This document shows positions 11,028-47,399 of a stretch of 64,000 bases of DNA, piece by piece. Location: contig NC_087454.1 of NCBI RefSeq assembly GCF_036321535.1, positions 20,832,001-20,896,000 of the forward strand, given 5' to 3'. A program made the position numbers and the translations under genes. The notes beneath the pieces are model-generated. The model ran no database searches. It was not told the origin of the DNA and saw only the letters and a list, made by a program, of their open reading frames with translations. How positions within the stretch are numbered: position 1 is the stretch's first letter; the number at the start of each line of letters is the position of its first letter. Source of the stretch: Camelus dromedarius. Its lineage: Eukaryota.

Positions 11028-14000
11028 ATGGCGTGTTCCTTGGACTTCTCTTTGCGGAGAGACTTCTTCTTTATCCTGCTTCTCCAGGTGTCCATGTGGG
11101 GCTCAGGTGAGAATATTTTATATTTCTGATATGTGGATTCTCTTGTTCTCTGAACAGAAGGATTAAACCACTCCATCATGTCTCATATCTACCTAAGTTA
11201 ATTCCAAATATTTTATTTTGATATAATAATGTATTTGCCCATACACGATGGCAAATAAATCATTATATGGTCATTTTAGAGAGAAGGACCAGGTAGAATT
11301 ACTTTAATGATGACTTCTAGTTCATTCAGATCTCAGCTTCTGGAGGAATGCATTTTCTGATGCGCAAGACCTGATTAAAAACTCTAGCTTCATGATTTCC
11401 CAGAACTCTCCCCTCCTCCTTCACTGAATTCACCCCCATGGCAATTTAAAAATCATTTGTTTAATACTTGATCATTCTGTTGGTTGTAAGATCTGCAAGG
11501 GTAGAAATCCGCCTTGTCTTGTTCACTGCCATCTTCAGCCTGAATTTGTGCTGCAAATTACTGCTGCGTGAGTGGGAGAGAGAATGTCCATGGGGCTCTA
11601 CTGGGCCAGTACTGACGCTGTTCTCAAATCCAGGCAGGTTATTCTGATATTCTTTTCATTTGTGGCTCTATTCCACAGATTCATTTTCGGTGATTGGCCC
11701 CTCGGAGCCCACTGTGGCCATGCTGGGTGCCGACACGGTGCTGCCCTGTCGCGTGTTCCCAGCCATGAGCCTGGAGAACATGGAGCTCCGCTGGTTCCGC
11801 TCCCAGTTCTCAGAAGCTGTGTATGTATATCAGGACGGGATGGAGCAGACAGGAGAACAGCTGGTAGATTTCAGAGGGAGAGCAGAGCTGGTGAAAGACT
11901 ACATCACTGAGGGAAGAGTGGCTGTGAGAATCCACAGCCTCCGCGTCTCAGACGATGGAATGTACAAATGTTTTTTTAAAAAGGGAAGTGATTTTGAAGA
12001 AGCCGTTTTGGAGCTAAAAGTGATAGGTGAGTAATTATCTGAAAATGTAGATTACTCTAAGGGAAATGTAACTGTTCTGTGTTTGATTTTGAGGGGAGGA
12101 TGGTGAACAGAACAAAGACAAAAAGACAGGTTTGCTTGGAGCTGGTCAACATCCTAAACACTGGATTTAACCCCAAATCCTCTTAATCTGTTTATACATG
12201 TATTGTTCTGTACTTTAAAATTAAACTATTTCCAGAAATATCTACCATAAAAATAGGTCACTTATTTCCCTCTATGTCTCCTCTCACACATTTTGAAGGA
12301 GGGCACCATGATTACCAAAATGTACCATTAATCTCAGAGGCCAGAATCCCATTTGGCTACTGTGTTGCACAGAGGCTTAACCGGGACTGTCAGTGGTCAA
12401 GTACTGAATGCACTGTTTGGAGAAAGTGACCATGAGGGTTTGACAGAATAGACTGATATTGCAGAAAAAGGAACAACAACAAAAAAAAGCATCATCCAAG
12501 GATTGAGGCTGGAAAATAATTAACATTCAGGAACTTAGTGAAGCAGAAATAGAGAAAACCATTAACAGGGTGGCTTTCGGGGAAATAAAAAGGCCCTGCA
12601 GATAGGGGCAACTGTGAAAGGCTGGAATGCACTGAGGACTGGTCCACAGAACATTGAATTGATCACTATGAGTGTTACCATCATTGGTGCTGTTTTGTTT
12701 TTAATTGTAATAAAATTATAACTCATTGCATCAAACTCAAACATTTCAGAAAGGTAAGAATATAAATGATTATCTTTTTTTCCCTTCAATATTCCTTTTC
12801 TCTTCCTAGGTAACTCTTAATGCCAGACTTCTGTGCCATTTCAGTTATCTCTATTTTTATATAATAAATTTTATATATAGTTATATTTATATATAATTAA
12901 ATTTATAAATAATTGTTTATAAAATAATAAAATATATTATGTAATTATAATATATAATATATTTATATAGCAGATCTTAATCTCTGTTCATAAATTAATT
13001 TTCAAAAATATTTATGTTTACTTATTTAAAAACAAAATTAATTCCGTCTTTAAGCCCTCAGCCAATCAGGCTCATGTGAAGTTATATCTTAGTTCTTATT
13101 GGAGCTTCCTGTCCCTTGTTCCCTTGAATAATAGTTGTGCAAGATCCCTGGAGTCTAATGCAGCCCATCACATTCAGGACTCAGTAAACCCCCTCCAGCA
13201 TTGGTCCCCTACTTGTTAGCACGAGGATGGTCATCATCCCAGCCTCTGTTACATCTTTCCTCACTGACTCCAGAAAGATTGCTACAAATATTATTAAAGA
13301 CCTTTGATGCAGCTCTTCAAGAGGCACCTAAATATCTCTGTCTCTTCCTTATGTTTTGAGAAATCTCCCCATCACTCTATCAAAATTTATTTCTATTCCC
13401 CTTAAGGACACTAGCTCATTGACATTATTTTTCCCACCTGTATTATATAATTGCTGTAACTAACTTACGCATTCAGCAATATAGGAAGAATGAGTTTCTT
13501 TATGCTGTTCCTGCTTTTAGCCAAGTAAATATCCCTGAAGCTGATATAATATAATTGGGGTCAGGAGAGAGAAAGACTTAGAGGACAATTCAAGTAACAG
13601 TTATTGAAGCACAGTTAAAAACACTATTAAAATGTCAAATAATTTTTGTTTCATATACATATACTGACTCCCTCGTGGACTCACTTCACCTTGTTACCTC
13701 CATCTTTTAGATAATCTTTACTCAGTGGAAGAAAGAAAATTTGGAAAAATTACAAAAGGAAATTGTTTAAGGAAGAGACCAGAAGAAGTCTCAATTTCAG
13801 CACAGAAAGATAGTCTTCCTTGAGACTCTAAGAAATGGAATAAGCATATGATATAGATATAGAATAGATATACTGATTTTCTTCCTGGAAGAATTCAACA
13901 TTGGCAAATTTTACTCTGCTCCTTTCCTATTACCCTTCTATGGCCAATTGCAGATATGCATGCACAGAGGAGATAAGACAGGCGTTGGTTATAAGTGTCA

Positions 14001-17000
14001 GTATCAGATTCATTGCTCTTAAATTTTTGAACCTCAGATACACACTTATCTCATGGAAAAAGAAAAGAAACCCCCTCCATCCATTGAGAACTATGGTGCT
14101 TTGTTCATCTCCCCCAACTGGTGTATCTGTGAAACATTAGGGGCTTCTGGACAAAAAAAAATGTCCAAGTCTCAGATAAATGACTTTCCTCTCCAGGTCT
14201 GGGTTCCAATCCTCATATTTTCATGGTGGGTCCAGAAGATGGAGGAATACGGCTGAAGTGCACAGGCAAAGGATGGTTTCCCCAGCCTGAAGTTCAGTGG
14301 AAAGATGCAAAGGAGGAGAGGATCCCATCTCTCTCTGAAGACCAGACGCAAGACGATGATGGGTTGTTTCAGACTGAGGCGTCTCTCATTGTGAGAGACA
14401 GCTCAAAGACAGAAGTGTCCTGTTCCATGAAGAACCCCTTCTTTGGACAAGAGCAAGTGGAAACCATTTTTATCCCAGGTCAGTGTGCTCATTTGGGGGG
14501 CAATTCAAGTAACAGTTATTGAAGCACAGTTAAAAACATTATTAAAATGTAAGTAAGAGGGGAATAAGGGTGGGTGAATACTGGGGACCTGGGATGGGAT
14601 ACGCTTGCTTGGTGTATGTTTTTGATCAGGTTTTGGGCACCCTGTGTCAGAGCCCTTCTTCCCTAGGACCTCTCCTTGGAAGGCAGCATTTGCTGTGACT
14701 TTCGTGATACTTGGGATTTCCATTGGTGCTATTGTGTATTTGGCTCTGAAAGAAAAACAGGAAAAGAAAAATGTATCAGAAGTTGAGAAGGAAAAGGAGA
14801 AAGAAAGAAAAGCCAAAGGTAAAACTGTGAATCAGACTTGGTGGGGATCTGTGAATTTATGGGTTTGTTAACAGGATGGCATCTTTTGGGAACACAGAAA
14901 GATATATACGGTTGAGTTAGAGCCCCAAGACCTCCATGAGAAAAAAATATTATTACAGAGTTCATTGGAAAGAAAAAACTCACGGTATAAACATAGGGTT
15001 TTTCTTTAATAGTCATAATAAATTTCAATTAAGGTAATTTTTTGTTCTAGGTACATGGAAGTAGCATTCAGGATCTGGATTTAGGAACACAGTCTAGAAA
15101 ATAAACCTTGGGTTTATTTTTTTTAACCTTAGGTTTATTTTCTGTTAAATCCATTTTATTATTTTCTTTCTTTTTTAGAATCACTTGAGAAGGAGCTTGG
15201 TAAGTTTTCCATTTTCTTTGCTCTAATAGAGGAAATAGAGTCCTTACTCTATGCCGTATGTCTGGCATCTCACAGGCTGTTATTCCTTTTCAGCCAGAAG
15301 GAAGACATTATATCAGCAAGGTGAGTTATATTGATGTGATGGTTGGGTCGACCATCTCACCTGCCCCTCTGTTCTAGTCACTTCCTATTTACCTTGCTGG
15401 TGAGGAAGGGATCCCTACCCTAAATAGTACAAAATGGTCAAACGTATGACACACAACACTGAACAGATGAGATTGATAGCAGTTTTTAAATTACATATAC
15501 TCACATCCTAGGGAGAAGGACACCATGAGCCATGCAGGACCACGTGGGGGTTGTACTTGAGAGCACAATGAGCTAGCAAGGGCTGTGGGAGGCAGGCTCC
15601 GTAGTTACAAGAGGATGAGATGCCTCTGTTTTCTGCGGAAGCATGAAATTGGCTTGTTTGAATAATTTTGCAGGCTGACGGTGAGGTGAAGCTCATTAGG
15701 TTAAAGACCAGGTGGGGTTAGGTTGCCTTGGCCAACAGAGAAATTAGCTGATAGGGGAGTTTTCCGTGCTGGGTGGAGGGCATATCGGGTGAGAGCAGGC
15801 AAATTAGGCACTTGGAGTCCTGTGAAGCTCAAAGGTGTCAAGGCAGCACATAAAATTTTAAGCTTTCCAATACTTTCACAATTCAAGCCTACCCCTGCCT
15901 TTAAAAACAAAACAAAAAAAAAAAACAACAACAAAAAATTAGAAAAAGAGAACCTCACATTTGATCACAAATGTGGAATGTGGAAAACGTGAGAAATGAA
16001 GCGGGAGATGTACAAGAGGACAAGCACATCAGAACCGTCACTGAGTGACGGACACGGCAGCGCAGCACCATCGTAACCCTTCCGCTTCCGCGTGGTCACA
16101 GCGTTGCCGCGCTCTGAAGTGAAGGTCCAATGAATGGGACAATCTACTTCCTTTGTTTTTTAGGGTTTTGTTTTTTTTTTTTTTTTTTTTTTTTCAGATT
16201 GGAGAAAAGCAGAGTTATATGCTGGTGAGTAACTGGTGTTGTCTTGGGCTTCAAGTGCTTCAGGATTTCATGAGGCATTTTCAGGGCAATTTTCAGAAAA
16301 GTGCCAACTTTTGGAGATTTTACTTTGAATCTGGGAGTTCAAAAAAAATACAAGGGATAAGGGGATAAGCATCTCACTCGTTCAAAAGACATGTTCTTGG
16401 CATATTTTCCCTTTTTTGTTTTTTCTTTTTAGACTGGAGAAAGGAACTGTTCAAAGCAGGTGAGTGACCTTACTATTTTGTCTCACATAATCTTTTCTAT
16501 ACAAATGAGAAAACACTCTATAATACCTAGCTGTTTATTCACTTCATGGCTTTTGCTTCAGTCTGTAGAAATGTGAACAGATTTCTTACTGTTCTGACAT
16601 CATTCATTCATTCATTCAGCATAAAATTATACAACTATTTATTCGGTGCCGAATGAATATAGCAGATCTTGTCTGACTTCGTGGGAAAGTGCATGTACAA
16701 ACGGTGATGAATATTATGGAAGGATAAGAGAATGCCATGAGAAAAAAAATGGTGGATTCAAAGAATTCCCCCAAGGAATTGATTTTAATCTGAGACTTAA
16801 GTGATATTTAAGTGAGACTTGAGATTTATTCATGCAGATAACATTGACAGAGTAGCTGAGGCAGAAGGAAGTCTACTACATAACCAGTCTGAGACAGAGA
16901 AGGGCTTGTTGCATCTCAGTGCAAGTGGAAAATAGCCCCTGATCATCTTAGAGTCTTTCCAGAATTATGAGTCAACTGTTTCTACTGTATGCTACTTAAC

Positions 17001-18547
17001 TCTGAATATCCCTGCGTCCACAAACATTTCCTAATTAATGTAATCCTCCAAAAGTTAAAATATATTCTAATTCCTCACATACAAATTCTTATGAGAAAAA
17101 TTTTAATTATTGAAGATGTGAGGTTTGCTACTATAGTTAGCACTGGTGCCACTCGCACTGCTGGTGTTAGTGTCACTACAACCATCGGAAGCTACCATTT
17201 ACCAAGTGCTCATCACGGGCAGGGTAAAGCATTATGTTCTCTGCACACTGTCTCGTTTGCTTCTCACTGTGCTGTGCTGAGGTGTCATCATCATATGCAT
17301 CTTCATGAGGTTACAGTGAGGTTGAGCAAGGCAAAGGAATTCCAAGATCACAGCTCCTAAAGACAGCGTGGTTATCACAATTCAGATCTTTCTGACCACA
17401 GAGTTGGGATTTCGACTATTAGAAATATAATAAGAGTGTGTGAGACTAGATGACTTATTTATTACATAAGCCCACAGAAAAATGACACCAAAGAAGCTCA
17501 AATGAAAGTAGATATGCTGTGATTGGCAATATGACACGGCTTAGTTATTAAGAGCGGGCAGTAAAGCAGTCAACGTTTGCATGAGGTTGGAGAAACCCCA
17601 ACTTGAAATATCTGATCCTGAGGGTTTTCAGATGAGACATCCTTCTTGGCTAAATGGTCTCAGTCTGTCTGGAACACATGGTTATCTAAGGTCCAATCCA
17701 ACCCTGACCTTCTTTGCCCTACACAACATGTGTCTCCTATGAACTGACATAGAATAGAACATAAACTGTTTTACCTTATCTTCCATTTCTCTCCCTCTTG
17801 TTTTTCTTCATTTTCCTTTCCTAGTAATTTGAATCTTTCCTAAAGTCACCCCATCTCCATGGTGGAATGATACTCATTTTTCCCCCCAAACCTGCAGTGG
17901 ATGTTACTCTGGATCCAGACACAGCTTATCACAAGCTCAAGTTATCTGAGAGCAGAAAACAAGTTTATTTAAAAGAGAATGATCCTCAGAATGGTGACGC
18001 CTCAACACACCAAGAGCAAGAAGAGTCTGAAACCATCTCCAGTGTTTTGGGCCAGGATGACCTTACCCCAGGGAGACATTGCTGGGAGGTAGAAGTGAGT
18101 ATGAAGACAGAAGTTGGATCTGGAACTAGATGTGCTCTGGGTGTTTGTGCAGTTATAGCAAAAAGAGAGGGCTGGTTTGCAGAAAGTCCAGAGAAGAATT
18201 TCTGGGTGGTAACATACAAGGAAGGAGAAGTCATTTCCCAGAAAGGGTCTCTGTCACTGAGACAGTGGCCCCGCAGGATTGGAGTTTTCCTGGACTGGGA
18301 TGCTGGGAACGTGTCCTTTTACAACATGATCGATGGGTCCCACATCCATTCTTTTACTGGAATCTCCTTCTGCGGAGAACTTCGTCCTTATTTTAGTCTT
18401 CAGGGTGATGGCACATCTTTGACTATCTGCTCAGCTTCAGATAACAATGAAAATTGTCCTGATTTTTCTGCAAAGGCCTCTGTAACTCATTTGAGTAGTT
18501 GTGATCTAAGTGTCCCCGAAGAAGCTAACTCTCTATTATGTCCATAA
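11028..18547 (+). CDS. Intact MHC-linked butyrophilin-like protein (signal-IgV-IgC-TM-heptads-B30.2), 542 aa
   Basis: Exons 11028-11106 (MACSLDFSLRRDFFFILLLQVSMWGS), 11679-12026 (IgV), 14197-14478 (IgC), 14651-14818 (TM, EPFFPRTSPWKAAF), 15179-15199, 15294-15320, 16198-16224, 16433-16459 and 17898-18547 (B30.2: VDVTLDPDTAYHKL...GRHCWEVEV...IGVFLDWDAGNVSFYN). All junctions are GT-AG; the total is 1629 nt with no internal stop. AATAAA at 19074-19079. Confidence 0.9.
13586..14550 (+). repeat. 50-bp near-identical direct repeat pair flanking the IgC exon of the BTNL paralog
   Basis: CAATTCAAGTAACAGTTATTGAAGCACAGTTAAAAACA(C/T)TATTAAAATGT at 13586-13635 and 14501-14550, with one mismatch. Confidence 0.95.
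15395..15875. mobile_element. Probable old solo LTR in an intron of the BTNL paralog
   Basis: About 480 bp, more GC-rich than the surrounding intron and LTR-like in composition. The family and orientation were not identified. Confidence 0.4.
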
Positions 18548-21745: not shown

Positions 21746-22769
21746 CTAAATAAAATAAATGTGTAAACATTTGTGAAAGAATAATGCATAGTTTCAAACA
21801 TAAAGTTATGAGCTTTAAAATGGAGAAAAAAATTATGAACCAGAAGAGAAAACTCTGGAATGCTGCAGAAAAAAAATCTTCGAAGGACAGCAGGAACCGT
21901 GGTGTCTGCCTCCCTAGACGGCAGTAGCGTGTCATTTGCTGGTATTCCTCATTCTCACTTCAGATGATTTTCAGACTTTCTCCAAATCTTTATTTCTTCA
22001 CATTCTTTCTTCTTCTACCTGTAGCTTCTCTTTCCTAATTCATTATGACTTTAAAATATTTTTATTTCCATTGCATTTTATTACTTGTGTTGCATTTATT
22101 GCTTATGTTTATTTTACAATTACTAATTTTAAATTGTGTTTTTTTCACTCTAAAAAATAAGTTTGACGTTTTCATATACATGACACATAACTAATTTTTC
22201 TCTTGGACTAGAATTTCTGAAAAGTTTCCTCACTCCGTGTTCTCAATTAACTTTCTGAAAAAAGTCTGGTGCAGGGATTCCACACTTCATGGGATTTTCA
22301 AGATTACATCTTGGTAATCAGGTTTTTCTCCTTATATTCAGTTGTATTTTCTCTTCCTTGTTTTTAACTATATTTTTGTTTTCTCAGCCCTCCTTGCATA
22401 ATTAATTGTCACTTTCCTAAAGAAACCAATCAAATACTTGGTCATGCCTTGCACTTCCTCATCTAGGCTAAATTGCATTTCCCACTGGGTTTTCTAAGGG
22501 TCCTTTGTCATCCGAAATCAGATTGTGATCAGTGGGCAGGATATCAGAGAGCTTGGATACAATAGGTCACTGAAAGAATCAGTCTTCTGGTCAGATTTGA
22601 GGCCAGAGTGTGGTTAAAGCCTCCTGATTGGGTACTTGGGTGATGGTGTGAGTTCCCTTCAGGTGGCTGGTGAAAGGAGAGAAAGGCTGGGATTCAGAAT
22701 ATAATGCCGGTTTCCAGAATCCTAGGTTATTATTTTCCTTGGAGGAGTTGCAGAGGCTCCCTTGGGTGC

Positions 22770-23270
22770 AGGAAAGATGTCAAGAGAACATACATTAGGG
22801 AACCAAAGAATGAAGTGAGGGATGCAGAATTTCAGAGAAGGAAACTGAGGGGAAGGGTATACACAGGGCACTTGCTGTTCATGTTATAAAAGGAGAAGCA
22901 TCCAGAGGGTGTAGTCAAGGGAGATTCTAATCTGTCCTGGGGACATGTGCAGGGAGAGGAGGAGGAGAGGAGAGGTGATGGCCCAGTACTCATTTCCATA
23001 ATAACCCATTGCTCAAACCCATTCTCAGATGGCATAGAGATGACTCCACGACATTGTCCTTGGCAACACTCAGGACCAGTGCTTCCCTGTCCCTAAACTC
23101 CACCTCTCAGACCCATCTGCCTGACATGAGCCCCTCCTGGCCCAGAGCATTGAGGAGGTTGTGAAATCTCTACAGATCTCTGGCTGCTTGATTGACCTTG
23201 GGCCACATGCTCATTTTCCTCAGAAAGGATTGCTTCTGGTGAGCTGTATTTGGGTCCAATGTCTCATTCG
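22770..23270 (-). pseudogene. Degenerate B30.2 (PRY/SPRY) exon forming the terminal exon and 3'UTR of BTNL2
   Basis: A phase-1 acceptor (ttttctttctctgcag) is followed by collinear B30.2 motifs across frameshifts: [124 protein letters not shown]. The 3' end is approximate. Confidence 0.85.
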
Positions 23271-24172
23271 CTGCAGAGAAAGAAAATTCATTCTGATAAG
23301 AATCAGTATGGGAGCATCTTAAAATACTAATTTCATGATATTAACATCCAAATGGGCAAACAAAAGTTATAGTAACTTAAGAAATTCAAAGTGGGAGAAA
23401 TTTCTAGGGCACACCAAACAACCTATCAATCCCTGGGAAGTCTTTCCTGGGCATGGTAGAAATAACCAATAAGCATCATATTTGTAATGATTTTAGTGAA
23501 ATGTTCATGCCAATAGCATCCCAGTTAAGTCTCAGCTCTCAGCCTTGAAAGCAAGGCTGGCTATGCCACATTTTTTCTTCTTCTACCTTAACTGGATCAC
23601 TTGGGAATGTGGACAGGGGCGGGAGGGTGAAATGATTGTCTTTTAATCCTTTTGCTTCTATTATAACTGTAAACTCTGATCTCATTCAGCACTGATCCTC
23701 AATTACACGTGTGTAAGCCATGGACTCTCGTGTTTTATTGATCACTGAATATCCACTGAATGCCTCTGTGTGTGCCTGCTGAAAAGAGAGGCCAGGGAAA
23801 GTGTACAGTAAGGTTCCCACCACAAAGCATGCTTCACACTGTTTCTGTTTGCCTGACTTACCTCGTCTACAGCAGCACCTCCAGATCAAGCCTATAGCTC
23901 CAACAAGAAGCACTCCCCAAATAATTGGTGTCATCCATGGAAAAGTCATCCTGAACTCTAAAACGGAAACCCCAGAATCACATTAAATCATGAAATTGGG
24001 AAAATTTCAAGATCTTCCTTTTCATCTGAGCAGCTCCTGGGCTGAGGAGGAGGGTTAGAATTGGTCCTGTCAAGAAGGAATTTGGTCTGCTCCTCCTTGC
24101 TCTGCAGATGCTGAGGAGAGACCAGAGGTTTATGCTGATTTTACTGTTTGCTCCTCTCAGAAACCACCCCCT

Positions 24173-24213
<41 letters not shown>

Positions 24214-27200
24214 CCCTTCTCTTTTCCAATTATATCATCACCATCACTGGAACAACAAGGGTGACAAAAAGATAAAATCACCAAGTCCAAGGCCGTGAAG
24301 ATAATGTTGAGGAAGATTAGTTTCTAATCCAGAAGAAAACCCATCATGAGGGGAAAAAAGTGATATCATTTTCACAACAGAAGAAAAGAATTTGTAGATA
24401 CAGTGACAATAGAGTCAAATCTTGGAATTTGGTATGTAACAATGTAACAATGTAACCTTAGAGCTTTAGTTGGGGATTTCTAGAAGAGACTCAAAAGAGT
24501 AGAATCTCTAGGTGTCCAGAAGACCAGCTTTGCAAGAGCCATCAAGAGGTTTCATCAGAAAGAAAAAAGGAAAAATAGAAAAGCGACATGATGAGTAAGT
24601 CTGGGTCAGTGTGCGTATTTATCTCCCAAAGCTGAGAGGAACGCATGGAGTCACTAACCTGAAAGAGAGAAAGCTGTCACTTTCTCCTCACCAAGAAGGG
24701 GGTTGCTGATGGAGCAGGTCACGTTCACAGTGGAGCTGTTTGTGACCAGTAGAAACGCCTCCACGCGGAATAGCCCATGGCTGCCTTGAGTCAGGTCCTG
24801 GGAAAACGATGGTATTGCCTTTCCTTCCACGTCCCTCCACTGTACATGGGGCTGTGGGAACCACCCTTCTGAAGTGCACAGTAGCTTTATTTCTCCATCC
24901 TTCCAACCCTCCACGGAGATCAGAGGGGAAGAACCAAGACCTGAGGAATAGAAACCAAGGAAGGCAACTTAGAGTCTCTGAAAGTGGTTATATAGTCAGT
25001 GACTTCACCGAGAGGGAAGAGGGGGAATCAGAAGTTTGGGGAAGAAACCAAAGTTTATTGGGAAATTACACTCCACTTAGGGATGATGCTAGCAGGAGTC
25101 TTTACTTGTTTCCTCTTGTTTACATATTTTTATTTTTATTTTATGTATTCCTAAAATCATCCTAGGACAGGTTAAGGGATCCAATACATTTCAAATCCAT
25201 TTTTTTTTTCTTCTATACCTGAAACAAAATAACTTTGACCAGGGCATGAGTCATATGGCCAAGAAAGAAAATGAAAGTGAATAAGAGAATACTCTCAAAG
25301 ATCAAAATCCTATAAATATATGTGTCCAATGGCAAAAATGATAGTGTTCATTTAACTTTTCAACATGCACTCCCATAGATAATTTTTAAATATATATATT
25401 AATTTGGATACACCATAAGTGGAAGAAACAAGTAGATTATCCCTGATTTTGGCTATGAACACAATGGAATTTGCTAACATTGGAAAACCAATTTTCACTC
25501 ATAAATAGAAGCAGTGGGACATCATGACGTGGGGAGTAACTTTGCCTTTCCTCTTCCATCCCTGCCAATACTGTCAATATTTATGATTTTTGCTTCTACA
25601 GTGGATCTGGTTTAGTCTTCATCATCATAATTTCTAATAACTATACATTTCCCAGAATTTTAACAACACACTGAAATAATGAGTCCTGTGTAGTTATGGA
25701 GTAAAATTTCCAGACTTCACTAGATGTACAGCCACTTTATGGAGATCTAGAGACGATACAAATTCTACACACACAGAATTAAATCTGGTCCACTTGTGTT
25801 TCTGGACTTGATGACATCTCTTGCACATTGGAGCGTTTAATATAAATTTGATGAGTGAATGGGCATTAAGAAAATTTTAGTGCTAGAGAAAATTTCCATG
25901 AACTAGGAAGTTAAAGCAGTAGAAACAGATGTTGAATTCAAAACATCTATCTAGAGTCCTTACCTACGATCTTCAGATCCAGATTGGCTTCCTGGTAGAC
26001 ACCATCTTTTTCAAAAAGGCACTGGTACTGTCCGTCATCTGAAATTGTGGCATTGTTTATCTGCAGGGTCAGCCTCCCCTCATTGATGGTATTGCTCACC
26101 AATACAGTCCTGCCTCTGTACTCGGCCATCTGCTCTCCAGCCACATGGTCCCCATCCATGTAGACATAAACAGCAGGATAGCGGTGGGATCGGACCCACC
26201 TAACCTCCATGCTCTGTGCATTAGTCTTAGGGGACAGGGAACAGGTTAATTGTATGTCTTCTCCCACTCTGACCAGGATGGGCTGGGAAGGTCCAATCAC
26301 CTTTAAGGAAGCTGAAAATACACAATGAAAGATTCAAAATGGAGCAAAGAGTGTCATCAGCAAGAACATTTCGGGTTGTTTAGAACCCAGGGGCATCCCG
26401 GGGGGGCTGATAATCTCATCATCATATCATTTAATCCTGTCTCAACCATCTTATTCAATAAGTGGGCTATCTCATTCCTCAAATACAGTAAACCATGTCA
26501 TGTCATATCATATGATATCATGACTCTTACTTAGAACCTGACACTACATTAGGGATTAAGTTCAATATGTGTATTTTAAAGTGACAAAGTAGAGACCAAT
26601 GACTTACTAAAATCACCAATAAGTGATTAAGAGCACATACTCTTAAGTCAGCTAGACAGAGATTAGAAGGCAAATATCACAATTTCTTCATGGTTTTCAG
26701 CAAACCACATATGTCTCTAAGATTGTTTCCCACCTGTAAAATGAGGACAAATCTATTCATCTTTAAAATTATTGTAAGAAAAGAAAATAACTCCTGAAAA
26801 GCACTTGGCATAGTGCCGAGCATATAATTAACCTTTCAAAAAATTAGTCATAATTTTTAAAATATTTGACAGGGTGGGAAGTAGAAATTCAGCCTCAGGA
26901 CTTCTACAGAAAGCTCAGCTTGCCTCTGAGCGCTTAGGCACAAGCCCTAACAACCAGAGGCGGCTGCGACTCCCCTGGTTCTCTCCATTAACAGCACACC
27001 CTTGAAGCTCCTGAGGGCCCAGCCCTCCTCCCGACCAGGAGCCAAGGGAAGCTCCAACTTTTCATCTTGTTTAACTGTGGTCCCAGAAGCTGTGCACAGC
27101 TTAGAAACAACATTAGGACATCAGGCTGTATTTTGTGTGCTGGGTCTCCAACGGACACGGCGATTTGGTTCAGATAACTCCAAGAAATGACTCTTCACTG

Positions 27201-30200: not shown

Positions 30201-33200
30201 TCATCTTATTGTAGCAGGCACTTTGTCTCACCTGTTGGATGGTAGCTTGACTCTAATTTAAATAGAATATTTAATATAAGGGGAGAAATCACCTCCAGGG
30301 AAAATGTTCTTCCCCTTCCTTTTGTTGGTGGTTGTGACCTTGAGATACAAACAGATAACCTGGGGTGTGTAAAGTGGCAAGCTTCATGAGGAGTTCCTCA
30401 GCCTAAATATTCCATTCCATGGGAGAATGGTTTTGAAACAGCCCAGTTTTATACAATCAGAAAATTCTTTCTGTATTCAACACAACTCTCAAACCCAAAC
30501 AAAGGTGATTATATTTTCCATAGATGGTGATTCTGTCTCTATCACTTGCCGGAGGACAGAGACCCACTTTCTCAGCTAGGGCCTTAGAAAATGCATGTTT
30601 GGTTTTCGGATATTCCTGGTGAAACCCCTTGGTATGTGCCCTCCACCTTGCACATCTCAGAAGTACGAGGATTCTTTCCTCCACTTTGAATCACCTGGAA
30701 CATATTAGCAGTAATAATCATAGTCACAGGTCGTACTAAAAAAGGTGTCAGGGAACAGCCTCATGGGGGAGCAAAGAAGGAGGCAGCATCGGCCGGAGAC
30801 GTTAGCACCTCCAGAGAGCCATTTCTCCAATGAGGGAAAGAGATTCACCTGATTTTGTCTTTAGCACATGATGGAGTTACTCCTGCCAGGGAACCATGTG
30901 ATAGTCCATTTTTCAGATATTTTGTTTTCCCACAGAGAAATCCTTTCTCCACTCTCCTTCTTCCAACTCCTCCCTACTTTGCCAACACAACAGCATCATA
31001 CAGAACCTTGCCCTTCACAGTGGGCACGTCCAAGAGCATCCCCGATCCCCCAGTTCACTGAACAGGAGTATATGATAATCCCCACAAAACACAGTGTTCT
31101 TAACCTCTTCAGTCTCATCAGGAGCCTTCTAACGGGACGTGTTACACAAAGAAACAAAGTGTTCACTTCTCAGTCCCTGTATTTTCAGGCTGAGTAGAGA
31201 ACACAGATGTAACTCAGCAACTGACCTGCCCTTGCACGCCAGCCCACGTGGCGTGGGTTCTTGCCTCCGCAAAACTGTTAAAGGCTACATGTCATCAACT
31301 GTAAATAGTCCTCAAGAATAGTCAAAACGTGTAACTTAAATCTGGGGAAATTGTGTATGAGTGAGCTCACTTTAAAGACTTCAGAAACACTTGCCTTCAA
31401 GTGAATCGGGAATGGAGAACTGGACAGTAGCAATTACCTTGATGGCCCAAAGGGAATTCTTCCGTTGGCAATAAGCTCACCACAAATTAATATACCTCTC
31501 TTTCCAAGACCTTATGTCTTTCCCCCGATATTCACCTGCTACTCTGAGCCACAAGCTTGTTTCACCACAGTAGTTTCCCTCTTGGAAGCGGCACCAGTAC
31601 TTCCCATCGTCGGATGGTTGGATGCTGTGAATCTTCAGAGCCACGGTTCCCTCAGCAATGTTGTCCTGTATCCACTCTGCCCGGTCTCTGTATCCCTCCA
31701 TCTGCGTCTCCGTCACCTCAGCTCCGTCCCGGTACGCAAACACAGGTGTGCTGGGCTCTGAGCGGTGCCACCGCACTTCCATGTGCGCCGCCGTTCTCCT
31801 GGGAAGGAGCTGACAGGTCAGGACGGCATCTTCTCCGACCATGGCCAGGATAGGACGGGCAGAACCAATCACTCTGAAGTCATCTACAAAAGAGTGACAA
31901 CGAAAACCAGGAAAAGCCGACTGGAGGATTAATATGTTTGCTTTGGGAGGTCCAGCCTCTCAAAATGGAGGCACCTGGAGGAGGGAAAGCTTTATTTTCA
32001 ATGTTCTAGAGAAATCCAGCATTATGATGTGTGATGGGAAGTGGGGCAAATCCACTATTCTCAATGAGATTTTGAGATTTGGAATCTCAATTTCTTAATC
32101 TTTAAGATACTAAAACCTCCATCTTCGGGTTGTTTTTATTCTCAAATAAGTTAATGTATAAATTGATTTTTCAGTTTGTAACTTTATTAGTTAGTGGCTT
32201 ACTTTTTATTTTATAGTGATTTATTTTATAGTCAGTAATTTCACTTCAGTGACTGAATTATAATCAGTCACTTTTCCTAAAATTTAGGTAATAGGTTTAT
32301 CCAATAGACTGTTCAGCTTTTCGGGCCTGCTCTTGTCCTAGGTAAAGCTTTTTTGTTTGTTTGTTTATTTGGTTGGTTTTTTGTTTGTTTGTTTTTTGGT
32401 CTGGAGCAGGCAAGACTCCAGTGACTGGGGCTGTGTAAAATGTTGTTTTTGTAAGGACATTTTGTAGTGAATTAAGGGCTATGACTTGTGTAGAGAGTTG
32501 AAGCCTCCCAATCAAATTTTAAGTCATGTTTGACCTCTTCATTATCTGCAAACTGAAGAGACGTTGAACAATTCTGTCTGTTACTACGCTTAATCATTTC
32601 ATCTGTTGTGTATATGACTTTTTTTCCTCATCATAAAATGCTCCAGGGCCATTGGCACTTTCTCTGTGCAGATCCAATCTTCCTAAGAAGGAACAGCATC
32701 TTGCTTAGTTGCTGCTCGATACCAAATAGACGGTGCTCAGAGGTGACTGTGGAACTTGGGTGGTGATCTGCTTGCTTTCTGCATGGATGCAATCTAAAGA
32801 TAAAGCCAGAACTGGAGTCCTACCATCTGGTTGGCTTTTTTTTTTTTAACAGGTTAGGAAAGAGCATCGCACAGAGGTTTCTGGCAGCCTCACCACATCA
32901 TGTAGTTTCTGGCAGCCTCAGTCTTGAGCCTGTGCCTCCTAGGGTCCTGTCCAGAGTCTCCCCACTTTGCCACCCTGTGTGTTCCTTGGGCTCCAATGTT
33001 ACCCACTGATATCGAATCTTCACAATCCTGTTTCAAGGTGCAATATTTTGACCAACAAACTTTAGCTACTGAGATTTCCAAGCCTAATTCTTGGAGGTCT
33101 CCTTCTAGTTTCTTATTTCCAAGTATTTTTATGCTGTTTAATTTATGGTTAAAAGCAGCCACTCTTTTCACCCCCAAAGTGCTGTTCTGAATAGAAGCAC

Positions 33201-36146: not shown

Positions 36147-36388
36147 NNNNNNNNNNNNNNNNNNNNNNNNNNNNNNNNNNNNNNNNNNNNNNNNNNNNNN
36201 NNNNNNNNNNNNNNNNNNNNNNNNNNNNNNNNNNNNNNNNNNNNNNNNNNNNNNNNNNNNNNNNNNNNNNNNNNNNNNNNNNNNNNNNNNNNNNNNNNNN
36301 NNNNNNNNNNNNNNNNNNNNNNNNNNNNNNNNNNNNNNNNNNNNNNNNNNNNNNNNNNNNNNNNNNNNNNNNNNNNNNNNNNNNNNNN
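36147..36388. other. Assembly gap (242 N)
   Basis: Run of N. Confidence 1.
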
Positions 36389-36550: not shown

Positions 36551-36679
36551 NNNNNNNNNNNNNNNNNNNNNNNNNNNNNNNNNNNNNNNNNNNNNNNNNN
36601 NNNNNNNNNNNNNNNNNNNNNNNNNNNNNNNNNNNNNNNNNNNNNNNNNNNNNNNNNNNNNNNNNNNNNNNNNNNNNNN
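36551..36679. other. Assembly gap (129 N)
   Basis: Run of N. Confidence 1.
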
Positions 36680-41623: not shown

Positions 41624-44600
41624 ATGGTCATGACTGGGGTCCCAGTCCTAGGAGTTTTCATCACGGTCCTGATGAGACTTCAGGGATCATGGGCTATCAA
41701 AGGTAAGTGCTGAGAGAATCAAAAGTAGGGGTTGTAACCTCTGAGAGCATCAGAGAAATGAGCTGTGAACATTTGGAAGATAGTCTTTGGAGTGAAAGAG
41801 AAATGTAACGGGTATTATGTGGGTCTGAATCTAGAACTGAAGTAAGTTGTAGTTGGAAGAGTCCTTTCCTCACCACAAATTGGAGTAAGTGAAGCTTAGA
41901 TTAGGGGCGAAACTCAGACACTGATTAATCCCATCGACTTGGAGATAAACCAGACTTGAGGGGAAATATTTTCTGACAGGCATTAACACGTTACCTCCCT
42001 GCACTTTAATTTTTCATTTTGGAAAATTAGTAAAATGAAAGGCCTGACATAATTTTGTGAGGGTTAAATCAGAAAAAATATGAGAATTTCTTGGCACCTG
42101 TTCTCAGCTGTTTTAGCCTGTGACTCCTCTCAGCATGTCTGGAGCACAGACATTATACTGAAGATCACGGGAAAGGACAGTCACCAGAAAGCAACCGCCG
42201 ATCCAGGGGAGGGTGAAAGGCAGGCCTGCTGATATGAGTCACATTTAATTTACTGCCTCCTGGGACAGTGACAGCCCCGGTTACAGTGGATCTTACAATG
42301 ATCTTAAGTCATTGTCACTAAATAATGTTCCCAAGAGAGCGGGAAGAGTAAAGAAGTGGAGGGTCTGCTATTATTCTGTGCCATCCCCAGAGCAAATGTG
42401 CCACTGTGAAGATGTATTGTGAAAAAACACTCCTCACCCAGAGGGACCCCCAAAGAAGGGGGCAGGTAGACTGGAAATAAGTAAAGAAATAACCCAGCTC
42501 CGAGACCCATGCTGACAGTTGTGGGTTTGTATTGCCCAGAAAGAGCCATACGTGAGGGTGTTTACCAGGAAAGATAGCTTCCCTGGAAGCTTTCCATTTC
42601 CTGGAAATGGAAAGAGTCAGTTAGAATATTTGTGTGTGTGTGTGTGTGTGTGTGTGTTTATAGCTGCAAATGCTAAAAAAAATCCCTAGGTTTATTAATA
42701 TAGAGTCAAATTTTAAAATCTACCTCTCATTTACATGCACCACAGAATACCCTTTGCAAGAGTCCTTTGATTGCAAACTCCTCGATTGTAACTTATTTCA
42801 AGTTGATTATTCCTTTCGTATAGATTATTCTCGCTATCAACTATAATAGAGTATGTCCCATAATGACAGTCTCAACTTAAAGATCTTTAAGATACAAGGG
42901 AACGTTGGCAAGGCCAACCTCAACAGAATCCTTCCCTCAGAGGCGTGCACGGAGCGGGTGCGGACCCAGGAAAGTAGGTGTTCTCCTGCACTACCAGGTC
43001 TCAGACTTAATTATTTGGGTACCGCAAGCTCCAGTCATATATTCCGTGGATCTGGTCCTTAAACACAAAGCAGTTTCTGACCCTAAAGTACTTGTTATAA
43101 TCCTGATGGTATGCTAAGAAATTACTTACAACTAGTCTGATTTAATCTTAAAAACAAACCCAATGTAGATGCAAAACCACAGTAGAATATAGTGAGAAAG
43201 CATCCTTCTACATAAATGATAAATTAATCTACTCAAGATCATTAGGTAAATAAGTAGCTGAATGAAAATTCAAGATTTACTTTGATTCCAGAGTTCCGAA
43301 TCCAGTCTTTTTCAACAGTGTTTGTCTCTTGTTAGAGTTACAGTGCTGAGAGACGCCCTGGAATTCGGGTTTAAGTGATTTAATTCCTAGGTCAAGAGAG
43401 AACGTTTCTCTTTTAGGAGCTGCTGCTGGATTTCTAAAGAGGAAATCATTTCTTGGCCAGTAACATGGAGCCAAACAAAAGCTTCATGAGACTCTGGGTG
43501 TTTCAGCTCTTGTGTCCACACTCTCTGCGTCACCCCTTCATTCCTCCACTTCCACCTCTGAGCAACACGAACGTCCTTCACCCGGCCTCCTCCTCCTGCA
43601 CAGCCTTGCTCTCCTTCACTCCTCCACTCCACTTGGCCTCTCTTCCCACCACTCCTGCCCACGTGTTTGTGCCTCACATCCTGGGTCCTCCCTCTCTCTC
43701 TCCTGGTTCCTACCCTAATTCCCTTTCTTGTCTTTTCAGAGGAACACGTGATCATCCAGGCTGAGTTCTATCTGAACCCTGACAAGTCAGGCGAGTTTAT
43801 GTTTGACTTTGACGGTGATGAGATTTTCCACGTGGATCTGGAAAAGAAGGAGACGGTCTGGCGGCTTGAAGAATTTGGACGGTTTGCCAGCTTTGAGGCT
43901 CAGGGTGCATTGGCCAATATAGCTGTGGACAAAGCCAACCTGGACATCATGATAAAGCGCTCCAACCACACCCCGAACACCAATGGTACCTCTCTCTGCT
44001 GCCCTCCTAGACGTGGGAATTGTAGCTTTAGATAGATGCTCAGCTCTCTCTGTTGTGTTATCGTGACTGACTTGCCCTTCCAGGGGCCTGACCTTGCCAT
44101 AAGCAAACCCAAAATTCTCACATTACCAACCCAAGAACTTTATGAGTTTGTTCCTTTCTGGGTGTGCTCACATCTTGTCTTTGCCACCCATGGTATCTCA
44201 TAAAGTCTTTGCCTGAATCCATGCTTCCATGCTGGGGGAGCCAAGAATGCGGTCCTTGGAGACCTTGAACCTTAGCATCGGTCGCTGTTCATGGGGAGGG
44301 TGTCAGAGCTGGGTATCTGAGACCATGGCGCAGATTCTTAGGGCACAAGCTCAACTGCTTTTTCAGCCTCAGTGGAAGGGAGAGGGGCAGGCCTAAGCAG
44401 GGAAGGCTGATTTCTGTCACCTGTCCCCCAGTGCCTCCAGAAGTGACTGTGCTCCCCAACACCCGCGTGGAACTGGGAGAGCCCAACACCCTCATCTGTT
44501 TCATCGACAAGTTCTCCCCACCAGTGGTCAAAGTCACATGGCTTCGAAATGGCAAACCTGTCACCACAGGAGTGTCAGAGACAGTCTTCCTGCCCAGGGA

Positions 44601-45173
44601 TGACCACCTGTTCCGCAAGTTCCACTATCTCACCTTCCTGCCCTCAACCGAGGACGTCTATGACTGCAAAGTGGAGCACTGGGGGCTGGAGGAGCCTCTT
44701 CTCAAGCACTGGGGTGAGAACCAGCCTTCAGCAGTTCCTCTCGTGATGCCTGGGTCTGGTCCTTTGGAACCCCAACCCCCTAACTGTTTCATAACAACTG
44801 CTCCAGTTCCTCCTCCTGGACTTCTCCCACTGCTCAGCTTTCCCCACTTCTAATCTGTAATTCCCTTAATACATCATCCTACCTTCCTCTTATTTAATTA
44901 ATGAAAAACTATTTTTTGACTAAGTGCCCAATTTTTTGATTAAGTGCCCAATATTTGGTCCTAAGTGCTGCTCCCTATTGCATTCATTACTTCTGTATTC
45001 TGTTTTATTTTTCCCCAGAGTATGAAGCACCAGTTCCCCTCCCAGAGACCACAGAGAATACGGTGTGTGCTCTGGGCCTGGTTGTGGCTCTGGCGGGCAT
45101 CATTGTTGGGACCGCCCTCATCATCAAGGGCGTGCGCAAAAGCAATGCTGCTGAACGCCGAGGGCCTCTGTGA
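41624..45173 (+). CDS. DRA: MHC class II DR alpha chain, 253 aa
   Basis: Exons 41624-41702 ([26 protein letters not shown]), 43740-43985 ([33 protein letters not shown]...), 44432-44713 (alpha2) and 45019-45173 (TM/cytoplasmic, ...AAERRGPL*). A non-coding exon 5 starts at 45875, with AATAAA at 46257-46262. 762 nt, open frame. Confidence 0.97.
42631..42657. repeat. (TG)n microsatellite in DRA intron 1
   Basis: Perfect TG run. Confidence 0.92.
44911..44968. repeat. 20-bp tandem repeat (about 2.9 copies) in DRA intron 3
   Basis: ATTTTTTGACTAAGTGCCCA, ATTTTTTGATTAAGTGCCCA and a degenerate third copy. Confidence 0.8.
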
Positions 45174-47399
45174 GGCACCTGCAGGTAGGTTTGATGTCAG
45201 AAGAAGACATATGTGGAGTGATTCAAGGAAAGGAAACAGAGTTGGGGAAAGGGCATGTGATACCTTTAAGGGAAGGGGAAATGACTAGAAAAGCCATGGC
45301 TATTGAACTATCTTTGTTGTTCAGAATCAGACATTGGCATCATCTGGTATCCCAAAGATTCATGGTGCTACACCCCTTTCCGTACATGTGCACCTAAAAC
45401 CACACCCTCTGTCTTGGGAATTATCTCCAGTAGCTAAAATAATTGTTTCGCATTAGAATTCTGAGTCCCATGATCTGGGAAAGACAACCTCAAGACTAAG
45501 ACATTTCTTGGCTTATGTTTCCTAAGACAGGACATCAATTCTGAAGCATTTCCAGAGCTTTGCTCTTTGGGGTGTAGGGTAGATTCACAGTATGAAATGG
45601 AAATCACTTGGAAACCAATGCCTGTTTTTGCCTCCAATCTGAAAAATGATGTCAGATGGTCTAAGAAAAGGTGAAGCCTGGTATGCTCACTTGTGCTTGC
45701 TTGGAAGGTAGGTTAGAGCAGTTCATGTTGGAAAGGCTGTATTTACTAGGGATCACAAATATTAAGAGGCTTTCCCAGAGTTGAAGGATTAAGAGTGAAG
45801 AGGAAGGAATCTGAAGGTAAGAGCTCAAAATATTCATCTTAAACTCTATAGTAACTATGTGTGTCTTCCTTCAGGTAATGGATCTGGGTAGAGAGAAGAT
45901 CAGTGAAGATATTTCTGCTTGAATAGCTTTACAAACCTGGCAATACTCCAGTTGTTCACCTCAGTGAAGACAACCATCCTTCAGGACTTTCCAGCCCTTA
46001 GCTACTCCAAGAGTAAAGACGCCTTCTTCAGTCTCCAAATTCCAGTGTCCCGTTATTCCCTGTCTACTGCTTCTTCTTGTATTGGCTTTTCCTCCATTTC
46101 TCACTGCCTTGTTATTATCACCATGTAATCTGTTTGGAATAGATCCCATAGGATTTTTTCTCTGCTATGGAGCCTTTTGAATGTTCTCTGGGGGCATCCT
46201 CTGTACACTTATTACTTGGAGATTCTTCCAACTGTGATTGTGATTTTTCTGAATGCAATAAACTTGAGTGGGTCTTAAGTGGAGTTTTTGGTTTCTGAGC
46301 CAGTTCTTCACACGGGCTGGGGAATATATGTGATCCTTCCATCCTGAGATATTTGAATGTTGAATGTATCTCATAAGCTCTGTAATTAAGCAGAAATATC
46401 CCAATTCATTAGGGCTCAGTTTCAATCAGAGAGTCTGCAAGAATCCAGTTGCTGAGGTCCAGTCCTCAGCTGGAAAACCCTAGAGTAGGGTTTATTTGTT
46501 CAGAGACAATTTAGCAGTGGGTTCACAATCTGATTTGGGTTCTTAAGCCTCAAAATCAGTGAGCTATTTGGATCGTCAGTAGAGTGAATCTCAAACCCTA
46601 AGGTAGGCCTCTGATAATGGGTGAGACAGATGGCAGTGGAGAGCTAAGCAGAATACGGGAGCATCCATATACATAACAGAATTTGCATATCAACACAACG
46701 CATTTTAGACTTGAGGAGGAAGGATATTGCACCCTGAGGATTGGCATTACCTCAGTCTTACGGATTTGGAATTTAATAAGCTTGCAGTCAAAGAATATAT
46801 TCTGTGTGATTTTAATCCTGTGAAATTTATGAGATTTGTTTTACAGTCATAGTATATAGTCTATTTTGTGGATATGCTTCATGAAATTTAAAGAAATATT
46901 AGATATAGTCAATTATACACATCAATTACAAATGTCAATTAGATCAAGATGGTTGAAGTATTATTCATATCTTTGATATCCTTACTGATGGTTGTTTGCA
47001 TGAAACTATAGAGATGTTTTCTACACCGTAATTTATCTGTTCTCTATCTCAAACTTTAGAATGCCTTTTTCCTCTTCTTTTACATTTTTCATAGTGATCT
47101 TGGGGGTGTATGTAAGAATTTATCTAGCGTGGAAACACCCAAGATGAAAGTACTGGGTTCTCCAAACTACACAAAGGGGTACACCAACTTATGCTCATAT
47201 GTCCGTGTGCAGTACTCAAATATAATCCTGTAGAATGCTGTTATTTCACATATTTTATAATCTTTTGATGTAGGAAATTTTTATAATACAGACAAGTTTA
47301 TCGGGTTTTTTTTTTTAGATTTGGGAAATGTTTTTATTATTCCAAACTCTAGTGCAACAAGCATTCAATTTGATGTCTCCTTGGGCCTGTGTAGAATTA

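What the first reader, a model, noticed from the sequence alone, without database searches (positions are those of the whole stretch)
22770..23270. Fossil full-length B30.2 exon hidden in the BTNL2 last exon and 3'UTR
Seen: downstream of the TM exon, a strong phase-1 acceptor opens about 500 bp that encode every B30.2 landmark in order across several frameshifts, including TGA in place of the conserved W of WEVE at 23109-23107. The first frameshift yields a 33-aa tail, [33 protein letters not shown]. Known: BTNL2 is described as a butyrophilin lacking B30.2. Inferred: ancestral BTNL2 had a B30.2 domain, lost by in-situ decay rather than deletion, and today's cytoplasmic tail is exapted from the PRY start plus frameshifted sequence. 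Species-specific tails could reflect different frameshifts, and some lineages might retain an intact B30.2-BTNL2.
Basis: partly seen in the sequence, partly recalled or inferred. Interest (0 to 1): 0.75.

Follow-up and report, generated by a model that had tools for sequence, protein, structure and literature searches.

The report
Decayed B30.2 exon ending camel BTNL2
The last exon and 3' end of the camel immune gene BTNL2 are the broken remains of the intracellular B30.2 sensor domain that other butyrophilins keep; the same exon is still open in sloth, dugong and tenrec, so the domain decayed in place, beginning in an early placental ancestor.

Summary
Confirmed. On the minus strand, from the acceptor at 23270 to about 22740, lies a full-length PRY-SPRY (B30.2) exon. 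It is broken by seven frame-shifting indels and two stops: TAG at 23172-23170, which is today's stop codon, and TGA at 23109-23107 in place of the W of WEVE.

A frameshift-aware alignment scores 248-368 against shuffles of 33±5. The best match is dugong BTNL2 B30.2, 63% identity over 148 residues.

The window is Camelus.

In a tree the relic joins the B30.2 of dugong and tenrec BTNL2 (100/99), not the neighbouring paralog (AU p 0.005).

The orthologous exon is an open frame that passes Pfam PRY and SPRY in sloth, dugong and tenrec. Marsupial BTNL2 models also carry B30.2. Camel, porpoise, aye-aye and porcupine share a 7-bp deletion, and three of them share the TGA, so the domain probably died in the boreoeutherian stem.

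No paper in the searchable library reports this, and the scan had not noted it on other DNA. Interest is moderate.

The parts
23862..23957 (-). BTNL2 transmembrane exon. It ends in phase 1 at 23862, with its GT donor at 23861-23860.
   Evidence: Sequence read. Its translation equals the TM segment of dromedary BTNL2 P0282.
23170..23270 (-). Coding part of the last exon: 33 codons, the first split across the junction, plus the TAG stop at 23172-23170. The first 11-13 residues are the start of PRY, and the rest is read out of the ancestral frame.
   Evidence: Identical to the C-terminus of P0282. The AG acceptor is at 23272-23271.
22740..23270 (-). The whole B30.2 (PRY-SPRY) exon relic, which is the ancestral terminal exon of BTNL2. 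The part after 23170 lies in the presumed 3' UTR. The end near 22740 is inferred from the C. bactrianus ortholog.
   Evidence: HMM on six-frame pieces, frameshift-aware alignments, DNA alignment, tree.
23190..23191 (-). Site of a 7-bp deletion, a frameshift, shared by camel, porpoise, aye-aye and porcupine. It is absent from dugong, tenrec and sloth.
   Evidence: Alignment columns 99-105. The annotated tails of seven more boreoeutherian species are in the frame it predicts.
23239..23240 (-). Site of a camel-only 1-bp deletion. It shifts the frame after the residues [11 protein letters not shown] and sets the 33-residue tail.
   Evidence: Alignment column 49.
23107..23109 (-). TGA in the codon of the conserved W of the WEVE motif. 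The same TGA is present in aye-aye and porcupine.
22856..23176 (-). Further lesions: a 1-bp deletion near 23176 (camel only), a 7-bp deletion near 23048 (camel; the porpoise has an overlapping 4-bp one), a 1-bp deletion near 23015 (shared with porpoise), and 1-bp insertions near 22909 and 22856 (camel only).
   Evidence: on the alignment.
21989..22113 (-). First AATAAA signals downstream of the stop, 1.06-1.18 kb away. They are candidate poly(A) signals and would put the whole relic inside the 3' UTR.
   Evidence: Pattern only, use not shown.

Best explanation
The interval is the ancestral B30.2 (PRY-SPRY) terminal exon of BTNL2, dead but still in its place.

Shown here. The exon keeps its phase-1 acceptor directly after the TM exon. 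In Camelus it now supplies only 33 codons and the TAG stop. It carries seven frame-shifting indels and two stops. Its orthologs are open frames in sloth, dugong and tenrec. A 7-bp deletion is shared by four boreoeutherian lineages.

Inferred. The rest of the exon serves as 3' UTR. The domain was disabled once, in the boreoeutherian stem, and each lineage then added its own lesions. Those later lesions set the length and sequence of each species' cytoplasmic tail. The exon survived because a gene needs a terminal exon with a stop and a poly(A) site, not because the B30.2 fold is still made. Camel BTNL2 therefore acts through its four Ig domains and a short tail, with no intracellular B30.2 sensor.
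For: - Homology is far beyond chance: z about 46, and 63% identity to dugong BTNL2 B30.2.
- The window's BTNL2 exons and tail are identical to dromedary BTNL2 P0282. DRA lies upstream in the window, as it does in the tenrec locus.
- In the tree the relic joins dugong at 96/80 and then tenrec BTNL2 at 100/99, inside a 99/95 clade with marsupial BTNL2. AU tests reject the neighbouring paralog (p 0.005) and BTN1A1 (p 0.0002).
- The order IgC2, TM, B30.2 exon is the same in all eight sequences compared.
- The exon is open and Pfam-positive in sloth, dugong and tenrec, with dN/dS of 0.45-0.48.
- The shared lesions are a 7-bp deletion in 4 of 4 boreoeutherians, the TGA in 3 of 4, and a 1-bp deletion shared by camel and porpoise. 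Annotated tails of horse, bat, squirrel, whale, sheep, seal and otter are in the frame the 7-bp deletion predicts.
Against: - The splice from 23862 to 23270 was not seen in reads.
- Run statistics are only suggestive. Runs X1, X2, X3 and X6 hold the relic stretch much more fully than the flanking intron, but X4 does the opposite.
- dN/dS of the boreoeutherian relics in the ancestral frame is 0.44-0.90 rather than about 1, so the contrast with the open exons is modest.
- The exact placement of the 7-bp gap is ambiguous, although its length is the same in all four lineages.
- Only four boreoeutherian and three atlantogenatan loci were read as DNA.
Confidence: 0.9

Rival explanations
1. The relic is the terminal exon of a different, now deleted butyrophilin gene that happened to lie downstream of BTNL2 and was captured as its last exon.
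For: BTNL paralogs with B30.2 exons do lie close by: window 17867-18547 on the plus strand and the opposite strand in the porpoise locus. The porcupine BTNL2 model takes a B30.2 from an exon 12 kb further downstream.
Against: The exon sits about 590 bp after the TM exon, with the same phase-1 junction, in every species read. That includes species where it is open and part of the BTNL2 model. The relic clusters with BTNL2 B30.2 of dugong and tenrec, and AU tests reject the paralog. No Ig or TM exon remnants of a second minus-strand gene were seen between 23957 and 22740.
Confidence: 0.03
2. The domain was lost several times independently in boreoeutherian lineages, and the shared 7-bp gap and TGA are parallel events or alignment artefacts.
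For: TGG to TGA is a single transition and could recur. The porpoise lacks the TGA. The elephant model shows an independent frameshift after RFDC, so independent loss does happen. dN/dS of the relics is below 1.
Against: A gap of the same length at the same place in all four lineages, drawn from both boreoeutherian superorders. Seven further annotated tails are in the frame it predicts. No boreoeutherian with an open exon was met among about 100 BTNL2 models; the one boreoeutherian model with PRY+SPRY, the porcupine's, takes that domain from a downstream gene's exon.
Confidence: 0.08
3. The broken exon still yields a B30.2 protein in camels, through alternative splicing, RNA editing or recoding.
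For: None found. The only hint is that the acceptor and the start of PRY are conserved.
Against: Seven frame-shifting indels and two stops are spread over the whole exon. No reading-frame piece is longer than 86 residues. No piece reaches a Pfam threshold.
Confidence: 0.01

Closest known systems
BTNL2 of Atlantogenata and marsupials (dugong P0299, tenrec P0336, sloth locus L004; wallaby P0033, opossum P0167)
   Same: Same gene position and exon order: IgV-IgC-IgV-IgC, then TM, then a B30.2 exon with a phase-1 junction. The relic is 63% identical to the dugong domain and is its sister in the tree.
   Different: There the exon is an open frame that passes Pfam PRY and SPRY. In the camel it carries seven frame-shifting indels and two stops, and only 33 codons are read.
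Canonical butyrophilins with an intact intracellular B30.2 (BTN1A1, BTN2A1/2, BTN3A1)
   Same: B30.2 is encoded by a single terminal exon after the TM or juxtamembrane exons. The landmarks LDP.TAH, LSE, GRxYWEVEV, FWA, LDY..G.xSFYN and FS..L.P occur in the same order.
   Different: They form a different clade (AU p 0.0002 against BTN1A1), and in them the domain is functional. That BTN3A1 B30.2 binds phosphoantigen is from the literature (PMC5820976, citing Sandstrom 2014).
BTN3A2, a butyrophilin that lacks B30.2
   Same: A family member that lost the intracellular domain and acts through its ectodomain and partners. That BTN3A2 has no B30.2 is stated in PMC5820976.
   Different: How BTN3A2 lost the domain was not examined here. 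For BTNL2 the whole exon is still present as a datable relic.
Neighbouring BTNL paralog in the window (B30.2 exon at 17867-18547, plus strand)
   Same: Same family and same locus, lying tail to tail with BTNL2.
   Different: Its exon is intact, with Pfam SPRY at 1.8e-17 and PRY at 2.1e-07. It aligns to the relic with a score of only 93, against 368 for dugong BTNL2. It groups with a sheep BTN3A2-like domain in the tree.

Membership tests
B30.2 / PRY-SPRY domain (Pfam PF13765 + PF00622) | Match to the PRY and SPRY profiles above Pfam's gathering scores | tested here: not met
   Only the pieces could be scanned. The best was PRY at E 0.032 and 14.3 bits against a cut-off of 27.5, and SPRY gave nothing. 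The orthologous open exons of sloth, dugong and tenrec pass both.
B30.2 / PRY-SPRY domain (Pfam PF13765 + PF00622) | Homology to B30.2 over the whole domain length when frameshifts are allowed | tested here: met
   Scores of 248-368 against shuffles of 33±4.6. Residues 5-163 of the dugong reference are covered at 63% identity. The HMM hits are colinear.
B30.2 / PRY-SPRY domain (Pfam PF13765 + PF00622) | One uninterrupted reading frame of about 170-190 codons | tested here: not met
   Seven frame-shifting indels, plus TAG 23172-23170 and TGA 23109-23107. It is a relic of the domain, not a domain.
BTNL2 (ortholog group) | IgV-IgC-IgV-IgC-TM exon series next to the class II DRA gene, with protein identity to annotated BTNL2 | tested here: met
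   Exons are mapped. IgV1, IgV2 and the tail are identical to dromedary BTNL2 P0282. DRA lies at 43667-45288. DNA identity to the C. bactrianus BTNL2 locus is 99.5%.
BTNL2 (ortholog group) | The relic's closest relatives are B30.2 exons of BTNL2 in other species, not of paralogs | tested here: met
   Tree support is 96/80 with dugong and 100/99 with dugong plus tenrec. AU tests reject the paralog and BTN1A1.
BTNL2 terminal exon in use (transcribed and spliced) | Reads that join 23862 to 23270 | tested here: inconclusive
The public gene models P0281 and P0282 use the junction. Four possible RNA runs hold 0.64-0.79 of the words of 22830-23270, but only 0.29-0.40 of those of 22700-24000.

The most novel reading that the evidence does not exclude
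BTNL2 began as a full butyrophilin with an intracellular B30.2 sensor. It lost that sensor once, through a 7-bp deletion in the boreoeutherian stem. It still makes a four-Ig, TM and B30.2 protein under purifying selection in sloths, sirenians, tenrecs and marsupials. Those species would then offer a natural 'before' state for testing what the BTNL2 B30.2 senses, and why humans, mice and livestock can do without it.
Probability: 0.55. Interest if true: 0.6.

Novelty: new member of a known kind. Interest (0 to 1): 0.5.

Why it matters
Reviews describe BTNL2 as the family member that lacks B30.2, and take this as a sign that it signals differently (PMC8313535). Here that absence becomes a datable event. 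The exon is still present, its first disabling lesions are shared across Boreoeutheria, and open copies survive in Atlantogenata and marsupials.

This has three practical consequences:
- It explains why BTNL2 cytoplasmic tails differ so much between species. They are out-of-frame readings of one dead exon, so they are unlikely to carry conserved signalling motifs.
- It warns that gene models which add PRY or SPRY to boreoeutherian BTNL2 can be artefacts. The porcupine model borrows a neighbour's exon.
- It names species in which a B30.2-bearing BTNL2 could be expressed and tested.

It does not change the general picture of how butyrophilins work.

Tried and rejected
- Pfam and PDB sequence searches on single reading-frame pieces: too short, with only a sub-threshold PRY hit.
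- tblastn with the window's own paralog B30.2: only E 0.088, because the paralog is distant and tblastn cannot cross frameshifts. I replaced it with my own frameshift-aware aligner and an HMM.
From then on those places were masked in scripts and sent to no search tool. The splice junction therefore remains unverified by reads.
- The +1/-1 pair that the protein-guided aligner placed at 23097 and 23074 is not in the DNA alignment. I dropped it as an aligner artefact.
- Porcupine 'BTNL2 with intact B30.2' (P0321): rejected as evidence of retention. Its B30.2 comes from L007:26527-27027, 12 kb downstream of the true relic at L007:14494-14959, and it groups with a tenrec BTNL1.
- dN/dS as a test of neutrality of the relics: inconclusive, at 0.44-0.90.
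- Loci for sheep, horse and seal: not on record. For armadillo and Rhynchocyon no DNA was served.
- Literature: eight full-text searches and several look-ups found no report of a BTNL2 B30.2 relic. Stammers 2000 and Afrache 2012 (looked up by DOI) and Nguyen 2006 (by PMC id) are not held; Rhodes 2001 was not looked up. Prior description there cannot be excluded.
- A words search of this scan's earlier findings gave nothing on this relic.

Full report
**What is in the window**

The 64-kb window is an MHC class II border region. It holds:
- a BTNL1-like gene on the minus strand, at about 1-6 kb;
- a BTNL paralog on the plus strand (IgV 11660-12034, IgC 14223-14522, intact B30.2 exon 17867-18547);
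- BTNL2 on the minus strand (IgV1 31534-31872, IgC1 about 29.5-29.9 kb, IgV2 25947-26300, IgC2 about 24654-24914, TM exon 23957-23862);
- DRA at 43667-45288 on the plus strand, and a DRB gene at 53.7-55.7 kb on the minus strand.

The BTNL2 exons translate identically to Camelus dromedarius BTNL2 (P0282, 518 aa). The DNA is 99.5% identical to the C. bactrianus BTNL2 locus L001. The window is therefore a camel, most likely a dromedary.

**Checking the observation**

The TM exon ends at 23862 in phase 1, with a GTAAGT donor. At 23272-23271 there is a polypyrimidine tract and an AG acceptor. That tail is exactly the C-terminus of P0282, and it differs at one residue from C. bactrianus P0281.

By eye, the three minus-strand frames downstream hold the B30.2 landmarks in order. 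I then tested this formally:
- Single reading-frame pieces are too short for Pfam. Only PRY matched, at E 0.032.
- I built an HMM from ten B30.2 domains and ran it against all 3237 six-frame pieces of the window. After the intact paralog exon, the four best pieces all lie at 23340-22835 on the minus strand, in profile order.
- I wrote a local aligner of protein against DNA that allows frameshifts. It scores 248 against a Dromiciops B30.2 and 229 against wallaby BTNL2, versus 33±4.6 for 100 shuffles.
- Against dugong BTNL2 it scores 368, with 94 of 148 residues identical. The window's own paralog scores only 93.

**The lesions**

A DNA alignment of the exon from eight sequences gives the following for the window, relative to the open dugong frame:

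| Lesion | Window position | Shared with |
|---|---|---|
| 1-bp deletion | near 23239 | camel only |
| 7-bp deletion | near 23190 | porpoise, aye-aye, porcupine |
| 1-bp deletion | near 23176 | camel only |
| TAG | 23172-23170 | camel only |
| TGA | 23109-23107 | aye-aye, porcupine |
| 7-bp deletion | near 23048 | camel (porpoise has an overlapping 4-bp one) |
| 1-bp deletion | near 23015 | porpoise |
| 1-bp insertion | near 22909 | camel only |
| 1-bp insertion | near 22856 | camel only |

The first three deletions sum to 9 bp. Today's ORF therefore returns to the ancestral frame just before its stop, where dugong, tenrec and sloth have CAG, the Q codon of PQRFD, in the alignment.

A +1/-1 pair that the protein-guided aligner suggested at 23097 and 23074 is absent from the DNA alignment, and I dropped it.

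Homology continues to about 22740, judged from the C. bactrianus ortholog. After I did not examine or send places 22783-22820.

**Whose exon is it?**

The closest B30.2 domains all come from proteins named BTNL2. A search with the IgV1 exon found a wallaby 'butyrophilin-like protein 2' of 808 aa with V-set x2, C2-set, PRY and SPRY. A search with its B30.2 showed the same architecture in Trichosurus, Petaurus and Monodelphis BTNL2.

A search with a full-length ruminant BTNL2 listed about 100 eutherian BTNL2 models. Three of them carry both PRY and SPRY: dugong, tenrec and porcupine. About a dozen carry PRY only.

In a maximum-likelihood tree of 40 B30.2 domains, with X at each break of the relic:
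- the relic joins dugong BTNL2 at 96/80, then tenrec BTNL2 at 100/99;
- this group sits inside a 99/95 clade with the marsupial BTNL2 domains;
- that clade is apart from BTN1A1, BTN2A, BTNL1 and the window's paralog.

AU tests reject the relic with the paralog (p 0.005) and with BTN1A1 (p 0.0002). The rival of a separate deleted gene is therefore not supported.

**Other genomes**

I fetched BTNL2 loci of Camelus bactrianus, dugong, tenrec (with DRA as its upstream neighbour), two-toed sloth, finless porpoise, aye-aye and porcupine. In all of them the B30.2-like exon follows IgC2 and the TM exon on the same strand.

In dugong, tenrec and sloth:
- the exon has no frameshift and no stop over about 183 codons;
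- it passes Pfam PRY (E 4e-25 to 6e-21) and SPRY (E 5e-24 to 5e-15);
- it keeps an open TM exon, with a GT donor and an AG acceptor in phase 1;
- pairwise dN/dS is 0.45-0.48.

Each boreoeutherian relic has collected six to twelve lesions over the same time, so three open frames by chance are very unlikely.

The porcupine model is a chimera. Its true relic lies at L007:14494-14959, and the model's B30.2 comes from another gene's exon 12 kb downstream. That matches its place beside a tenrec BTNL1 in the tree.

**Dating the loss**

- All four boreoeutherian sequences (camel, porpoise, aye-aye, porcupine) share the 7-bp deletion. Dugong, tenrec and sloth keep those 7 bp and, with them, the frame WQ.(I/L)P(D/E).PQRFD.
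- Camel, aye-aye and porcupine share the TGA at the W of WEVE.
- Camel and porpoise share a further 1-bp deletion.
- Taking alignment columns 99-105 out of the dugong or sloth sequence and translating reproduces the odd tails annotated in horse, bat, squirrel, gray whale, sheep, seal and otter. Those species are therefore read in the frame that deletion creates.
- The elephant model keeps the 7 bp but shifts frame after RFDC, which is an independent loss. This rests on the protein alone.

The most economical reading is one inactivation in the boreoeutherian stem, followed by lineage-specific decay. I put this at about 0.75.

One caveat: Nei-Gojobori dN/dS of the relics in the ancestral frame is 0.44-0.90 rather than about 1. 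I cannot tell method bias from signal here.

**Is the exon used?**

Indirect evidence:
- The public models for both camel species use this junction.
- Among runs that may be RNA, X1, X2, X3 and X6 hold 0.64-0.79 of the sampled words of 22830-23270. They hold only 0.29-0.40 of the words of 22700-24000, which includes the 590-bp intron. This fits a spliced terminal exon.
- Run X4, which is RNA on record, shows the opposite pattern.
- The first AATAAA signals lie at 22113-21989, which would place the whole relic in the 3' UTR.

**How it works**

- Shown: the ancestral terminal exon keeps its acceptor and now provides 11-13 in-frame PRY residues, about 20 out-of-frame residues, and a stop.
- Inferred: it also provides the 3' UTR and poly(A) site, and this is why the exon stays in use after the domain died.
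- Inferred: the tail sequence is a by-product of which indels each lineage happened to fix.

**Novelty**

Reviews state that BTNL2 lacks B30.2 (for example PMC8313535). Eight full-text searches found no paper that mentions a relic, a frameshifted exon, or B30.2-bearing BTNL2 orthologs. The older closed-access papers could not be read (Stammers 2000 and Afrache 2012 are not held; Rhodes 2001 was not looked up). Public annotation already shows PRY and SPRY on some BTNL2 models, so the facts are visible to anyone who looks.

I class it as a new member of a known kind: domain loss by decay of an exon in place. It is of moderate interest to butyrophilin and MHC evolution.

Noticed in passing
window 17867-18547 (+): Intact B30.2 exon of the neighbouring BTNL paralog, lying tail to tail with BTNL2 about 4 kb from the relic. 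It has a long acidic insert in its PRY part and groups with a sheep 'BTN3A2-like' domain at 100/97. The porpoise locus has the same convergent arrangement (L005:20561-20047, opposite strand).
   Followed up: partly
L007:26527-27027 and L007:14494-14959 (Erethizon dorsatum): The public 660-aa porcupine BTNL2 model joins BTNL2 Ig exons to a B30.2 exon of another gene 12 kb downstream. It skips the true, decayed BTNL2 relic.
   Followed up: yes
L002:14513-14605, L003:41245-41343, L004:17333-17428: The public dugong and tenrec BTNL2 models splice IgC2 straight to the B30.2 exon. The sloth model stops after IgC2. All three loci nevertheless hold an open TM exon with good splice sites. The models probably under-describe a four-Ig, TM and B30.2 protein.
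   Followed up: partly
protein P0296 (Loxodonta africana BTNL2): The elephant model keeps the 7 bp that Boreoeutheria lost, but shifts frame after RFDC. That would be an independent loss of B30.2 within Afrotheria. Its DNA was not read.
   Followed up: no
window about 24150-24230: A (GT/AC)n microsatellite in the intron between the IgC2 and TM exons, seen as CVCVCV and THTHTH runs in the ORF list.
   Followed up: no
window 36147-36388 and 36551-36679: Two runs of N.
   Followed up: no
window 22700-24000, run X4: One run that is RNA on record holds more sampled words outside 22830-23270 than inside it, unlike four other runs. It may be unspliced RNA, DNA carry-over or another transcript.
   Followed up: no
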